A stretch of 64,000 bases of DNA from Guillardia theta CCMP2712 (lineage: Eukaryota; Protista; Cryptophyta). How positions within the stretch are numbered: position 1 is the first letter of the stretch; each line of letters begins with the position of its first letter. Below, in pieces: positions 4,760-9,052 of this stretch. Under the pieces are notes generated by a model, which made no database searches, was not told where the DNA came from, and saw only the letters and a program-made list of their open reading frames with translations. Position numbers and translations under genes: made by a program. Location of the stretch: NCBI RefSeq assembly GCF_000315625.1, contig NW_005434651.1, forward strand, positions 243,779 to 307,778. Direction: 5' to 3'.

Positions 4760-5943
4760 TGCAAAGCGCATGAGGAAGGGGGGTCTCTACGGTCTGGGGG
4801 GTACAAGTTGTATTTGGGTGGGTAGTCTCGTTGATGGGGTAGTAATTCAATCATCACTCAACTAGTAGAAGTGAAAACAATCCGTTACCTTGAGTAATAA
4901 TTTATTTAGGAATCCTAGTGGAATCGCAATTAGAGAGGGGTAGGGTGCACAAGGGGTAGGGTGGAGGGAGAGGGAGAGGAGGACGGGACGCAGCATGCCT
5001 GGTAAAGGGTACGGTACATGATGGGTGGGTCAGAATATGGAAATTTGAGGGTAGGGGTGTGACAACCTGTTCATAGATGCAGGTAGGGTAGTCGATAAAC
5101 CGGTGATATTTCCACATGACCCCTACCAAATACATGAAAGTTGTATGAAAAATAGGGGTTATCAGTACCCTCAGTATGATCAGTATTGTTGGTTATGGGT
5201 ATTCATCGGATTACATTGAAAGCTTCTTTTGAAGGGGGTGGTTGTTATAGTCAAGTGCAAGTTGGATTGTGAGGAGTTGGGGTATACCACTTAGCTATCA
5301 CAGTTTTACTTAGAGCTTCACAAGTAAAAGTTGCCTCATGGCCCAGATTGTATTTTCTTCGACATTCAGTAATGACTATGAACCTCCAAATATTGACTAA
5401 AACACCTTAAGAAAGTTCGAGAAAGTCGGACTGTGGGGATGAGGGCTCAATGCCATGTCCTAGGCCTTGTCCTACCACCAGGTCCTATTGTCGTCCCCGT
5501 AGTATATGGAAATCAGTAGGTAGGGTTGGAATGGGAAAGGAGGGGTAGGGTGGTAGAAATTTTGGAGAGAGGGAATGCAAGGTGCGAGGAGAGGAGCAGG
5601 TACAAGGAGGAGGAAGGCAGAGAAATATTTGAGCATGATGTCATAGACTGCAGCGGTATCGTGATTGGAAGGGTCAGAGGAAGGCTGGAAGGTGAGGGAG
5701 CGGGATGTACATGATAAGAAAAAGGAAGGGAGCGAGATCAGGAAGGAAGTGCGGGAGTGAGAATAAGTTCGAGGAAACAAAAGATAAGAATATCCGAATC
5801 TTGCAGGTTGCTTGTGTTCGAGTGGCAGATAGTCGATGGTGAGGAAACAAGTTGTCTAGTACACCGGACATCAGTCTGTTTTTGTTCAACTTCCCACGTC
5901 CCTCGCTGATGCTGAATTGTTAGTTTTCAGGTTAACCTCGGAC

Positions 5944-6267
5944 ATGAACAGTAAGCTTTACCCGATGATGATGCGGGCGTCGAGAGCCTTGCGGCCCAGC
6001 GTCAGAACCCTGTCGAGCCAGCAGAGCTCTTCGCAGAGCACAACCGGAGCAAACAACCAGATTAGGTTGGAGAAGGATGTAGTGGAGGACCTTCTTCAAG
6101 TGCTCGCCTGCCCCCTCACGAAGTCGAAGTTGACGTATAACGAGGAGACAAACGAGCTCATCTCAGAGGAGGCAGGGGTCGCGTACCCCATCGTGAATGG
6201 AATACCCAACATGATCCCACATGACGCAAGAATAATTGACCAGGGTAGCAGGGCAGATGGACCGTAA
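5944..6267 (+). CDS. PYURF: Trm112-like/UPF0434 mitochondrial protein (preY/PYURF-like)
   Basis: LLQVLACPLTKSKLTYNEETNELISEEAGVAYPIVNGIPNMIPHDAR motif, preceded by an Arg/Ser-rich mitochondrial-type presequence. Confidence 0.85.
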   Translation: MNSKLYPMMMRASRALRPSVRTLSSQQSSSQSTTGANNQIRLEKDVVEDLLQVLACPLTKSKLTYNEETNELISEEAGVAYPIVNGIPNMIPHDARIIDQGSRADGP

Positions 6268-6390: not shown

Positions 6391-9052
6391 TCATGTCCCC
6401 TGCACGTGAGTCAAGATGTGCATGTGCATGCCCGAAAGGTCTTGTGACATGCTGCGGGATGGAAGAGACACGAACCTTGAGCTGAGAGAAGCTGGAGTGA
6501 AACATTTCCTTGACAGAATCCAACCCTGGAAACGTTTCAGTGCAAGTAGTAGCCGAGGGAGGCAACGGGAAGGAAAAGAGCGAAACACCAAAGGGGGAGA
6601 GGGGAAGTTGCAGTAGGAGAGGAAGAGCAGCAGGGGCAGCGGGAGCTCACCACGTGTCGAGGCAGACTTGATCTTCTCGATCTGATCGGACTGAAAGACG
6701 CTGAAGTTTTGCAAGACCTTAGGCGAAGATGGAGAGGCGTCAGGAGCTGAAGGCGTCAGCTTCATGATATGCTGCATGGGATTGAGCTCTTTCCAACTGA
6801 ATTTGGCCCAGTCCTGTCGATCTTCGACTTTCTTCTGTCTCCCGCTCGCATCCTTCTTCTCCTTCACTTCTCGTCAGATGCCCTCGGGCCTCCACCCCTC
6901 TTCACCTCTTCCTTCGGGGGTTTCGGAGGCGAGAGCACAGGCACGTCTTTGCTCATTTCTGGCTTCTGCTTCTGCTCGGTTGACACGCTTTGATCGTTCT
7001 TGATGCGGAGACGAATGCCAAACTGCCGGCTAGGTGGAGGTCAGCCGGGCATTGGGTAAAGGAGGAACTTTCACGTCACCTCGCCAGGATCTTGTCGAGG
7101 CTGCCAGCCCCAAGATCGACATCACTGCACAAGTTCAACCTCACATTGTCCGCAAGCTTGGTCGAGATCTGCACGGTGAGAGGCAGGTCAGGCGAGTGGG
7201 GGTGCGGCCAGCCCAAACACCGACCGACGAGGTGGCATGCAGCTTGGAGAGGGGCCAGTCTGCTCATCGGATCACCCGCCAGTGCACTCGCAAGGGAAAG
7301 CGATTTGATTTCACCGTTTGAAACTCTTCCTTTCACCTCGAGCTCGTTCCCTGGAAAAGTGTATCCTCCTCCTACCGCCCAGCTCCTGCAAGAGCCCAAC
7401 AGGGACAAAACGGTCAGCTGACTAACTCAAGGGGAGCAAGCATCCTCACTTCTCTGAGGTATAGAGGGCGCCTACTTTGGCGTTTCCGAGGGTTTTCTCC
7501 ACTGCAAGAGTGTAAGGGACAGAGAAAGCGGATCTCAGCACGTTCCTGTCCATGTCCACACGTCCTTCAAGATGGGAACCTTGCAGCTATCTGCACACCC
7601 TTCCTTCAGGTCTGATCACGAGAGGTCGAGCGTAGACCTGCAACAGCCTTTGCGGGTCGGATTGACGAGAGCACCGAGGTGCAGAAGGTCATCGGGCCGT
7701 TGGAATCGCTGCTGTCCTCAGTATACTTCGTGCTCGACCCGGCGAACTCCTCCTCTTCGGGCAGCGGCTGCGAAAGAGCGCACGATGAAGGCAGGGGGAC
7801 GAAGAGAACACTCATGGAACCTCAGGGATCAGGATGTTGTCTACTGCATCCCATACTTTGTCCATGATGTGGTTGAGAGAACCGTCCGATGTGATCATCA
7901 ACCCGAGTCCATTGTACCTGGCCACGTCCATCATCGTCGTCGTTGTCGTCGTCGTCGTCATCATCATCATCATCATCATGAAGAACCATAACAACAATTT
8001 CATCGTCAATCGTCTTGTCCCATCCTCCGCATCATCATACGCACTTCACAGACGCCATGGAATTGCTCATGGTCAAGTTGGGGCTCCGGGAAAACTCTCC
8101 ATCGATCGAGGTGGAAAAGCCACATGTGAAATTCCCCTGGACAAAAGACATGGCAACATCCATCTGAGGCGAAACGTGGTCAGTTCTTCAGAATGACATC
8201 ATTCGATCGCAACCTTCTTGCTGAGGTAATCTTGCCATGGCTTTGCGCCATCGATCTGAGTGACATTCATCATCGCAGACGCTGCCATGTCCACATGCCC
8301 GTGAGGGAGAGGGACCTGCTTGCCATCAGTTGACCTGCCGGAGGGGAAGCGAGAGGATCGGAAGCAGAGCAGAGGAGGAGGGGAGGAGCTAGGGAGCGAA
8401 TTTTGCCCACCCTGGATTGCATCGACACACGATTGTAGATCGTGTTGTTGGTGCGAGAGTTGGGCACAGTCATTCCCTGGTTGAAAAGTCAAGACCGACG
8501 TCGAGACAAGTTAAGCGGTGCCTGTATTCCCAACTTGTTGTCTCCAGCTGACAAGACAGCCTCTGCATACAGACGATGTTGAGGATCCACGGTAGCAGAC
8601 AGGGAGAGGGGCCCGAACTGTCTCTTCGATCCTACAACGCCGATGATCTCATTGTAAGCCTGGGCGACAAACTCAGCCACACGTCCTCGCTCTTCCTATC
8701 ATTATGCACTCTGCACACCTTGCGGGTGAAGGTGCTTGTAATGCTCGTTCCAGCGGCCTGCATCCTCAAGTCTCCTCTGATGGATCCCATGTCGAACCCG
8801 TCTTGGAGGACGGCAGGCGTGACGTCCTTGAAAGTCTTTGCTCATCGACATGAACAATCAGGGAGTTCATTGTTCTCACCAGGGGACAGAAGTGCTTCTT
8901 GCTTTCATCCTTGAGATGTACTGTCCAAGGTGGGTGAGAAACAATAAGCGTGACAGCAGCTTCATCCTACCTGGCTGGCACGTGGCGTGGCTTGATGCCT
9001 GCCCAAGGAGGCATGCCAGGCAAACGAGGATCGCGAGCAAGTTCTTCCTCAT
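6391..9052 (-). CDS. Divergent VDAC/Porin_3-like beta-barrel protein with N-terminal signal peptide and C-terminal extension (multi-exon)
   Basis: Manually spliced exons give MRKNLLAILVCLACLLGQASS.., PLTFKDVTPAVLQDGFDMGSIRGDLRMQ.., ..NFTCGFSTSID..LTMSNSMASVKYNG.., ..WAVGGGYTF..EVKGRVSN..ISTKLADNVRLNLCSDVDLG..RQFGIRLRI, collinear with VDAC. The junction near 7510-7680 is uncertain. Confidence 0.6.

What the first reader, a model, noticed from the sequence alone, without database searches (positions are those of the whole stretch)
6391..9052. VDAC-like beta-barrel behind an ER-type signal peptide
Seen: this gene is invisible in the ORF track, but joining short exons gives a hydrophobic leader (MRKNLLAILVCLACLLGQASS|HAT) followed by segments collinear with VDAC. 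N-terminal helix/beta1: PLTFKDV..VLQDGFDMGSIRGDL (cf. human VDAC1 PPTYADL..VFTKGYGFGLIKLDL). Middle: KLGIQGMTVPN (cf. KLTFDSSFSPN) and LTMSNSMASVKY (cf. VTQSNFAVGYK). End: VKGRVSN..STKLADNVRLNLCSDVD and last strand QFGIRLRI. Known: that strand fits the mitochondrial beta-signal (polar-x-G-x-x-hydrophobic-x-hydrophobic), and VDAC/Tom40/Mdm10 normally have no cleavable leader. There is also an acidic loop insertion and a C-terminal tail of about 120 aa. Inference: a porin rerouted into the secretory route, for example to a membrane of the four-membrane plastid (the +1 residue is non-aromatic) or to the cell surface or an extrusome.
Basis: partly seen in the sequence, partly recalled or inferred. 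Interest (0 to 1): 0.82.

Follow-up and report, generated by a model that had tools for sequence, protein, structure and literature searches.

The report
Divergent leader-bearing VDAC-like porin gene
An apparently unannotated 18-exon gene of the cryptophyte alga Guillardia theta encodes a very divergent relative of the mitochondrial VDAC pore that seems to start with a secretion-type leader, which suggests a pore sent through the ER, possibly to the four-membrane plastid, rather than to mitochondria.

Summary
An intact minus-strand gene of 18 short exons runs from 9052 to 6391 (516 aa). It is single-copy. From residue 66 to the last residue it is 77% identical to a protein recorded for the sister alga Hanusia phi. 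That protein fixes 15 of the 17 exon junctions.

Pfam does not see Porin_3, but three other tests support a VDAC-type barrel:
- Protein-language-model features: 29 of 30 nearest clusters are Porin_3.
- Profile comparison with cryptophyte VDAC-like porins is collinear over the whole barrel, at score 37 against at most 21.6 for shuffles.
- An HMM of those porins gives 19.8 bits against at most 7.7 for 1000 shuffles.

The last strand carries the mitochondrial beta-signal.

The nearest relatives are not ordinary VDACs. They are the cryptophyte porins that themselves carry a hydrophobic leader followed by LRLRGG. This scan noted that clade before on another contig of this genome (s1-434721). Exon 2 aligns with that post-leader segment, which supports the leader exons.

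The leader junctions therefore remain inferred, and the destination membrane is unknown. The structure model was weak.

Verdict: a real, divergent, lineage-restricted Porin_3-like gene that probably carries a leader. It is a new variant of a known kind.

The parts
8971..9052 (-). Exon 1. ATG at 9052. Hydrophobic leader: basic n-region (MRK), a 12-13 residue hydrophobic core, then A-S-S before the likely cleavage point (residues 1-21). Ends in phase 1.
   Evidence: Read. Donor CAG|GTAGGA. Codon score 0.25 bits/codon, like the confirmed exons. Aligns with the leader of P0005. Not covered by the orthologue.
8880..8920 (-). Exon 2 (41 nt). Linker between leader and barrel, with two Cys and no in-frame ATG.
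   Evidence: Acceptor GGACAG|, donor CTG|GTGAGA. Aligns with the LRLRGG-GPL segment of the leader-bearing porin P0010. Codon score 0.29. Not covered by the orthologue.
8719..8835 (-). Exon 3. VDAC-like N-terminal segment (TFKDV..VLQDGFD), first strand and start of the second. The frame is closed by a TGA two codons upstream of the acceptor.
   Evidence: hhalign places query 42-117 on VDAC profile 4-82. The orthologue covers it from the internal Met (residue 66).
8522..8659 (-). Exon 4 (46 aa), followed by a GC..AG intron (8521-8477).
   Evidence: 96% identical to P0001. Junction fixed by the orthologue.
8411..8476 (-). Exon 5
   Evidence: Identical to the orthologue.
8214..8315 (-). Exon 6
8045..8163 (-). 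Exon 7. The intron after it (8044-7918) holds a (GAT/GAC)n repeat that is not coding.
7821..7917 (-). Exon 8. Start of the roughly 70-aa insertion relative to VDAC.
   Evidence: The orthologue reads through VWDAVD..ILIPE.
7638..7767 (-). Exon 9. Acidic, poorly conserved loop (PLPEEEEF...).
   Evidence: About 70% identity here. pLDDT under 50 in the model.
7546..7590 (-). Its donor is GA, not GT (intron 7545-7502).
   Evidence: The orthologue has ..ILKDVWTWT|VEK.. contiguous.
7450..7501 (-). Exon 11
7315..7385 (-). Exon 12. Holds VKGRVSN, which matches VKGKINSDG of the VDAC-like porins.
7225..7259 (-).
   Evidence: The orthologue has NDWSLSKLHATSS.
7080..7168 (-). Exon 14. Penultimate strands.
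6906..7029 (-). Exon 15. Last strand, with the beta-signal QFGIRLRI at 7025-7002, then the start of the tail.
   Evidence: Motif as defined in PMC3045335.
6651..6834 (-). Exon 16. K/S/P-rich tail with the conserved DWAK.SWK.LNPM motif.
6476..6525 (-). Exon 17. Terminal amphipathic helix.
   Evidence: Helix with pLDDT 62-80 in the single-sequence model.
6391..6399 (-). Exon 18. Gly-Thr-stop.
   Evidence: The orthologue also ends in ..QLKGT.

Best explanation
The locus is an intact, expressed-type gene for a fast-evolving member of the eukaryotic porin (Porin_3, VDAC/Tom40) superfamily. It descends from, or is sister to, the cryptophyte-specific porins that carry an ER-type leader.

Protein layout (516 aa):
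- Residues 1-21: signal-peptide-like leader.
- Residues 22-41: a 20-residue linker, in the place where its relatives have LRLRGG.
- A VDAC-like N-terminal segment.
- A barrel ending in a mitochondrial-type beta-signal. It is stretched by a roughly 70-residue, partly acidic insertion.
- A 112-residue lysine/serine/proline-rich tail that ends in an amphipathic helix.

Inferred mechanism:
1. The leader takes the nascent chain into the ER lumen. In cryptophytes this lumen is continuous with the outermost plastid membrane.
2. The barrel is then inserted in a non-mitochondrial membrane and acts as a solute pore.
3. The tail serves as a docking or regulatory arm.

The most plausible target is a deeper membrane of the four-membrane plastid. 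The third membrane holds an Omp85 insertase that could read the beta-signal.

Shown: the gene, its exons from residue 66 on, and Porin_3 kinship. Inferred: leader splicing, leader cleavage, the route, the membrane and pore activity.
For: Gene and exons:
- 18 exons give an open 516-aa frame.
- It is single-copy, and its exons are collinear with P0001.
- It is 77% identical to the Hanusia phi protein over 443 residues.

Porin_3 kinship:
- ESM-Atlas features: 27 of 30 nearest clusters are Porin_3 at score 0.91. For the barrel part alone it is 29 of 30 at score 0.94, with 188-190 shared features.
- hhalign against cryptophyte VDAC-like porins: N-end on N-end (score 37) and C-end on C-end (28.8).
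- 90 shuffles topped out at 21.6 and the reversed sequence scored 15.8.
- P0001 alone aligns 4-338 to profile 63-298 in one collinear piece.
- hmmsearch gives 19.8 bits against at most 7.7 for 1000 shuffles.
- The beta-signal fits the published motif.

Leader:
- The exon 3 frame is closed upstream, and exon 2 has no ATG.
- The splice sites are consensus, with 44-50 nt introns like the rest of the gene.
- Codon scores are 0.25 and 0.29, against negative off-frames.
- Single leader-bearing porins score 26.8-46.4 for three of the four tried (P0023: 21.8). The alignments run through the linker, and for P0005 through the leader. A leaderless canonical VDAC scores at noise level, 15.1.
- Those relatives carry leaders in complete transcripts.
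Against: - There is no Pfam Porin_3 hit for the orthologue, for single exons, or at this locus in the six-frame genome scan.
- There is no sequence hit to solved structures.
- AlphaFold failed on the single sequence (pLDDT 38).
- With VDAC rows as the alignment, AlphaFold gave only pLDDT 59. TM-scores to VDAC/Tom40 were 0.34-0.45 among the first 15 matches, and that model is not independent.
- A leaderless start (ATG 8908 with donor at 8887) is mechanically possible.
- The linker is short and holds Asp and Glu, so it is a poor transit peptide. The LRLRGG motif of the relatives is absent.
- The beta-signal is of the mitochondrial kind and is an information-poor motif.
Confidence: 0.6

Rival explanations
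1. It is a divergent mitochondrial outer-membrane barrel, an extra VDAC/Tom40-like paralogue. The leader exons do not belong to it. Translation would start at ATG 8908 (a 7-residue head spliced to exon 3) or at an internal Met of exon 3.
For: - The beta-signal is of the mitochondrial type.
- The orthologue protein starts at the internal Met.
- An alternative start and donor exist.
- No Tom40 gene was located in this genome by the six-frame scans, so that role is formally open.
Against: - The alternative donor (TCT|GTCCCC) lies 8 nt before a consensus donor.
- Exon 2 in the leader frame aligns with the post-leader segment of related porins.
- Exons 1-2 have coding-like codon usage.
- The nearest relatives carry leaders, and a canonical VDAC scores at noise level.
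- A cryptophyte Tom40 would be expected to hit Pfam Porin_3. This protein does not.
Confidence: 0.17
2. The protein is the same, leader included, but it stays in the general secretory pathway. It would end in the plasma membrane, the periplast or an ejectosome membrane, like the reported plasmalemmal VDAC-1 of mouse, and not in the plastid.
For: - The signal peptide is followed by only 20 residues that hold acidic residues and two Cys. That is unlike a transit peptide.
- There is a precedent for a VDAC with a short leader trafficking through the ER and Golgi (PMC2234005).
Against: - No beta-barrel insertase is known in ER, Golgi or plasma membrane.
- The conserved beta-signal implies an Omp85-type insertase, and outside mitochondria that points to the plastid's third membrane (PMC3045029).
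- The mouse case itself is disputed.
Confidence: 0.15
3. It is not a membrane barrel at all. It would be a beta-rich secreted or lumenal protein whose likeness to VDAC is compositional.
For: No Pfam or PDB sequence hit. The structure models are poor.
Against: - The likeness is collinear from the N-terminal segment to the last strand.
- It is far above the shuffled and reversed controls.
- It is specific to one porin clade.
- The language-model neighbours are almost all Porin_3.
Confidence: 0.06

Closest known systems
Cryptophyte leader-bearing VDAC-like porins (G. theta GUITHDRAFT_166637 = P0005, on contig C210, and its orthologues P0006-P0012 and P0023)
   Same: - Hydrophobic N-terminal leader, a short linker, then a VDAC N-terminal segment.
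- Collinear barrel.
- VKG(K/R)..SD motif.
- Last strand R-x-F-G-I-x-L.
- Best profile and pairwise scores of anything tested.
   Different: - Those proteins are about 295 aa and pass Pfam Porin_3 (81 bits).
- They carry (L/M)RLRGG after the leader.
- The target is 516 aa and has no Pfam hit.
- It has VHLKDE in place of the motif, plus a roughly 70-aa insertion and a 112-aa tail.
- Apart from its Hanusia orthologue, identity to these porins is only about 17-26% over the aligned barrel.
Mitochondrial VDAC (Porin_3, PF01459; e.g. human VDAC1, mouse 3EMN)
   Same: - Order of elements: N-terminal segment, many amphipathic strands, beta-signal in the last strand.
- Language-model neighbours are Porin_3.
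- VDAC and Tom40 are the top fold matches of the guided model.
   Different: - VDACs have no leader or tail and are about 283 aa.
- The target has a probable signal peptide, an insertion and a tail.
- A canonical VDAC (P0025) gives no signal in a pairwise profile comparison.
Mouse plasmalemmal VDAC-1 (pl-VDAC-1; Buettner et al. 2000, as described in PMC2234005)
   Same: A VDAC that gains a short N-terminal leader from separate 5' exons and is routed into the ER-Golgi pathway.
   Different: There it is a splice variant of the ordinary VDAC-1 gene, with a 13-residue leader and an unchanged barrel. Here it is a separate, highly diverged gene.
Toc75 / plastid Omp85 of complex plastids (ptOmp85)
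   Same: A beta-barrel of an organelle outer membrane that carries a cleavable N-terminal targeting extension. In complex plastids it is reached through the ER (PMC3045029).
   Different: It is an unrelated barrel family (Omp85, 16 strands with POTRA domains). No sequence likeness was found.

Membership tests
Porin_3 (PF01459, eukaryotic porin: VDAC/Tom40) | Match to the Pfam model above its gathering score (28.4 bits) | tested here: not met
   No family at E up to 10 for P0001 or for ten single exons. The locus is not among the six-frame genome hits. The joined G. theta protein has no reference and was not sent to the scan.
Porin_3 (PF01459, eukaryotic porin: VDAC/Tom40) | Significant, collinear profile similarity to bona fide members over the barrel | tested here: met
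   hhalign scores 37 and 28.8, against a shuffle maximum of 21.6. One collinear alignment, 4-338 to 63-298. hmmsearch 19.8 bits against at most 7.7 for 1000 shuffles. The members used pass Pfam.
Porin_3 (PF01459, eukaryotic porin: VDAC/Tom40) | 19-stranded barrel with an N-terminal helix | tested here: inconclusive
   The single-sequence model failed (pLDDT 38). The model guided by VDAC rows has pLDDT 59 and about 18 strands in the N-truncated orthologue. VDAC and Tom40 are the top matches, but among the first 15 at TM 0.34-0.45 and rmsd about 10. The model is not independent of the alignment.
Porin_3 (PF01459, eukaryotic porin: VDAC/Tom40) | Beta-signal PoxGhyxHyxHy in the last strand | tested here: met
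   QFGIRLRI at 7025-7002 is conserved in Hanusia and aligns with the RxFGISL of the porins. Motif definition from PMC3045335. The motif is information-poor.
Porin_3 (PF01459, eukaryotic porin: VDAC/Tom40) | Mitochondrial outer membrane location, no cleavable leader | not testable with these tools
   The sequence suggests the opposite, a leader, but neither splicing nor location could be tested.
Cryptophyte leader-bearing porin clade | N-terminal hydrophobic leader on the mature transcript | tested here: inconclusive
   Present in the gene model with consensus splice sites and coding-like codons, and aligned to the leader of P0005. No transcript evidence.
Cryptophyte leader-bearing porin clade | Ubiquitin-tail motif (L/M)RLRGG between leader and barrel | tested here: not met
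   The aligned place reads VHLKDE, followed by a 5-residue insert.
Bipartite targeting signal of complex-plastid proteins (signal peptide + transit peptide) | Signal peptide followed by a transit-peptide-like stretch. Aromatic +1 for stroma, non-aromatic for the periplastidal compartment. | tested here: inconclusive
   The signal-peptide shape was judged by eye only (basic n-region, hydrophobic core, A-x-S before the cut). No SignalP or ASAFind was available. The +1 residue would be His. Only 20 residues, with Asp and Glu, precede the barrel. The rule is as described in PMC3045029.

The most novel reading that the evidence does not exclude
Cryptophytes keep a small set of VDAC-derived barrels that are made with ER leaders and inserted in the inner-lying membranes of the complex plastid (periplastidal or third membrane). 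This fast-evolving member, with its long insertion and tail, would be a specialised pore or docking channel there. It would give a molecular handle on how solutes cross those membranes.
Probability: 0.3. Interest if true: 0.85.

Novelty: new variant of a known kind. Interest (0 to 1): 0.66.

Why it matters
Eukaryotic porins are regarded as mitochondrial proteins without cleavable leaders. Screens for new members even discard proteins predicted to enter the secretory pathway (PMC3045335).

How metabolites cross the second and third membranes of red-derived complex plastids is poorly understood. No paper in the searched library links VDAC-type barrels to cryptophyte plastids.

A second, strongly diverged leader-bearing porin gene in the same genome shows that the leader-plus-barrel design is a small gene family rather than a one-off. 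It offers two constructs for localisation experiments. It also shows that standard annotation misses such genes: Pfam gives no hit, and no protein of this locus turned up in the protein database.

Tried and rejected
- Pfam, exon by exon and on the orthologue: nothing.
- PDB sequence search: nothing.
- Word-index homologue search with the whole orthologue and with its region 236-345: only the orthologue itself. It sees only proteins of 246-784 aa, so shorter or longer kin are not excluded.
- Exhaustive representative search with exon 4 (46 aa): only the Hanusia protein is a real hit. That query is too short to reach distant kin.
- The look-up of encoding contigs for the orthologue: not on record, so its 5' mRNA sequence could not be read.
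- TIGR00989 (Tom40) scan of the genome: no match anywhere, controls included, so it is uninformative.
- Aligning the exons as separate rows with MAFFT produced a scrambled alignment (A1). I discarded it.
- My first hand model (506 aa) was wrong at three places and was replaced after comparison with the orthologue.
- A first shuffle script timed out and a second gave no answer. The third ran.
- The joined G. theta protein has no reference, so it was not sent to any search, fold or family tool. It was built from window.fa only inside local scripts.
Full report
**Setting**

The window is G000:C23:243779-307778 of an 87.1-Mb, 669-contig assembly. Its own VDAC-like protein is recorded as GUITHDRAFT_166637 of Guillardia theta CCMP2712. 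The genome is therefore that cryptophyte's nuclear genome.

**The gene**

The three minus-strand frames of 9300-6200 show many short open stretches bounded by GT and AG.

- My first hand model had 16 exons.
- An exhaustive search of 1.84 billion representatives with exon 4 (window 8522-8659, minus) returned one true hit, P0001. It is 448 aa and 96% identical. It is UniRef A0A6T7P7F5, an uncharacterised protein of Hanusia phi, the sister genus.
- Comparison with P0001 corrected the model to 18 exons and 516 aa. Exon 8 runs on to 7821. There is a 45-nt exon at 7590-7546 and a 35-nt exon at 7259-7225.
- The two proteins are 77% identical over 443 aligned residues, from residue 66 to the shared C-terminus ..QLKGT.
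- A six-frame search of the whole genome with P0001 finds only this locus, exon after exon in order.

The gene is therefore single-copy, intact and conserved in an expressed-type sequence of a relative.

No G. theta protein for it appeared in the 5.8-billion-protein index, although other G. theta proteins are there. It is probably unannotated, or annotated only as fragments.

Two introns fixed by the orthologue are non-canonical: GC..AG at 8521-8477 and GA..AG at 7545-7502.

**Is it a porin?**

Negative results:
- Pfam finds nothing in P0001 at E up to 10 or in single exons.
- The Porin_3 model and a profile of cryptophyte porins, run over the genome in six frames, ring only on contigs C210 and C10.
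- No solved structure matches by sequence.

Three other tests agree with each other.

1. Language-model features in the ESM Atlas.
   - 27 of 30 nearest clusters are Porin_3, at score 0.91 with 175 shared features.
   - With the tail removed, 29 of 30 are Porin_3, at score 0.94 with 188-190 shared features. They come from apicomplexans, ciliates and euglenozoans.
2. hhalign.
   - The two-sequence alignment (G. theta model plus P0001) was compared with the full-length (255 aa or more) cryptophyte Porin_3 proteins among the 22 fetched with the C210 gene.
   - Residues 42-117 fall on profile 4-82 (score 37). Residues 327-404 fall on 202-267 (score 28.8). So N-end lies on N-end and last strands on last strands.
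   - Forty-five full shuffles and 45 block shuffles gave top scores of about 15, with a maximum of 21.6. The reversed query scored 15.8.
   - The tool's own hhalign of P0001 against alignment A3 gives one collinear alignment, 4-338 to 63-298 of 300. It has 234 columns at 21% identity and E = 5.7e-4.
3. HMMER.
   - An HMM of the leader-bearing porins, run with all filters off, scores the joined model 19.8 bits and P0001 12.8 bits.
   - The best of 1000 shuffles scored 7.7.

The last strand reads QFGIRLRI. This fits PoxGhyxHyxHy, the beta-signal in the last strand of VDAC, Tom40, Sam50 and Mdm10 (PMC3045335). That paper warns that the motif is information-poor.

Structure prediction did not settle the fold.
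- The single sequence gave pLDDT 38.
- With 14 porins as alignment rows (A2), the model is strand-rich: about 18 strands in the N-truncated orthologue. pLDDT is 70-87 in the C-terminal third and under 50 in the insertion.
- The mean pLDDT is only 58.9.
- Its best PDB matches are VDAC and Tom40, but among the first 15 at TM 0.34-0.45 and rmsd about 10.
- That model leans on the VDAC rows, so it is not independent evidence.

I put Porin_3-superfamily kinship at about 0.85. Formal Pfam membership is not met.

**Which porins are closest?**

Alignment A2 shows that the cryptophyte proteins fetched with the C210 gene are not ordinary VDACs.
- Nine of them (P0005-P0012 and P0023) begin with a hydrophobic leader followed by (L/M)RLRGG, which is ubiquitin's C-terminal tail. 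The VDAC N-terminal segment follows.
- Several come from transcripts flagged complete.
- Leaderless canonical VDACs also exist: P0025, and the G. theta gene on C10.
- This scan had already noted the LRLRGG porin on another contig (s1-434721).

In single-sequence profile comparisons:
- The target scores 46.4 (probability 83%, E = 8.9e-6) against P0010.
- It scores 34.1 against P0005 and 26.8 against P0008.
- It scores 21.8 against P0023, the fourth leader-bearing porin tried.
- It scores 15.1, noise level, against the canonical P0025.

The alignment to P0010 runs through exon 2. The target's PVHLKDE....CPLTFKDV lies on PLRLRGG-GPLTWSKL. The alignment to P0005 starts at residue 1 of both proteins.

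The target therefore looks like a strongly diverged paralogue of the leader-bearing clade, one in which the ubiquitin-tail motif has decayed.

**The leader**

Exon 1 begins at ATG 9052. It encodes a basic start, a 12-13 residue hydrophobic core and A-S-S before the likely cut. I judged this by eye, as no predictor was available.

Support for exons 1 and 2:
- The exon 3 frame is closed by TGA two codons before its acceptor. Its first in-frame Met would delete the VDAC-like N-terminal segment.
- Exon 2 has no in-frame ATG.
- The introns between exons 1, 2 and 3 are 50 and 44 nt long with consensus sites, like the others in this gene.
- Codon-usage scores of exons 1 and 2 are 0.25 and 0.29 bits per codon. 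These match all but two of the orthologue-confirmed exons (0.22-0.41; exon 13 scores 0.09 and the 9-nt last exon, with its stop, -2.54), while their off-frames are negative.

Points against certainty:
- The Hanusia protein starts at the Met equal to residue 66, so it says nothing about exons 1-2.
- A leaderless alternative exists: ATG 8908 with a weak donor at 8887.

I put the leader at about 0.8.

**Destination and mechanism (inference)**

In cryptophytes a signal peptide delivers proteins to the ER lumen, which surrounds the plastid. Further passage needs a transit-peptide-like stretch, and an Omp85 insertase sits in the third membrane (PMC3045029).

- A barrel with a conserved beta-signal is most easily explained by insertion through such an Omp85.
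- However, the 20-residue linker, with Asp, Glu and two Cys, is a poor transit peptide.
- A stay in the secretory pathway is therefore a live rival. The mouse pl-VDAC-1 variant is a precedent for that route (PMC2234005).
- A mitochondrial location without the leader is the second rival.

The roughly 70-residue insertion (exons 8-10) is acidic and less conserved. The 112-residue tail has a conserved DWAK.SWK.LNPM motif and a terminal helix. Neither has a counterpart in known porins, and their roles are unknown.

**Literature**

No paper in the searched library combines Guillardia theta or cryptophytes with VDAC and signal peptides or the periplastid.

The joined protein was never sent to a search, family or fold tool. 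It was assembled from window.fa only inside local scripts.

Noticed in passing
L001 (G000:C210:62876-66622) and proteins P0005-P0012, P0023: The G. theta 'VDAC' on contig C210 and its cryptophyte orthologues carry a hydrophobic leader followed by (L/M)RLRGG, ubiquitin's C-terminal tail, before the VDAC N-terminal segment. P0005 passes Pfam Porin_3 at 81 bits, against 171 bits for a leaderless canonical VDAC.
   Followed up: partly
L002 (G000:C10:755216-758323): A multi-exon, leaderless canonical VDAC gene (starts MAPPKFKDLGKK, last strand HRFGITAL). G. theta thus has at least three Porin_3-type genes. No Tom40 was located by the six-frame scans.
   Followed up: partly
window 8477-8521 and 7502-7545 (minus strand): Two introns whose borders are fixed by the Hanusia protein lack GT. 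One is GC..AG and one is GA..AG. The exon before the GA intron is 45 nt, so skipping it would also keep the frame. This could be a real non-canonical splice, a sequence error or a strain difference.
   Followed up: no
window 7918-8044 (minus strand): A (GAT/GAC)n microsatellite inside intron 7 reads as a poly-Asp run in one frame. It is not coding according to the orthologue.
   Followed up: yes
window 5917-6267 (+): The convergent neighbour is a 116-aa ORF with a Trm112p-like domain (PF03966, 48 bits) and an N-terminal presequence-like stretch. Its 3' end lies about 125 nt from the porin gene's stop.
   Followed up: partly
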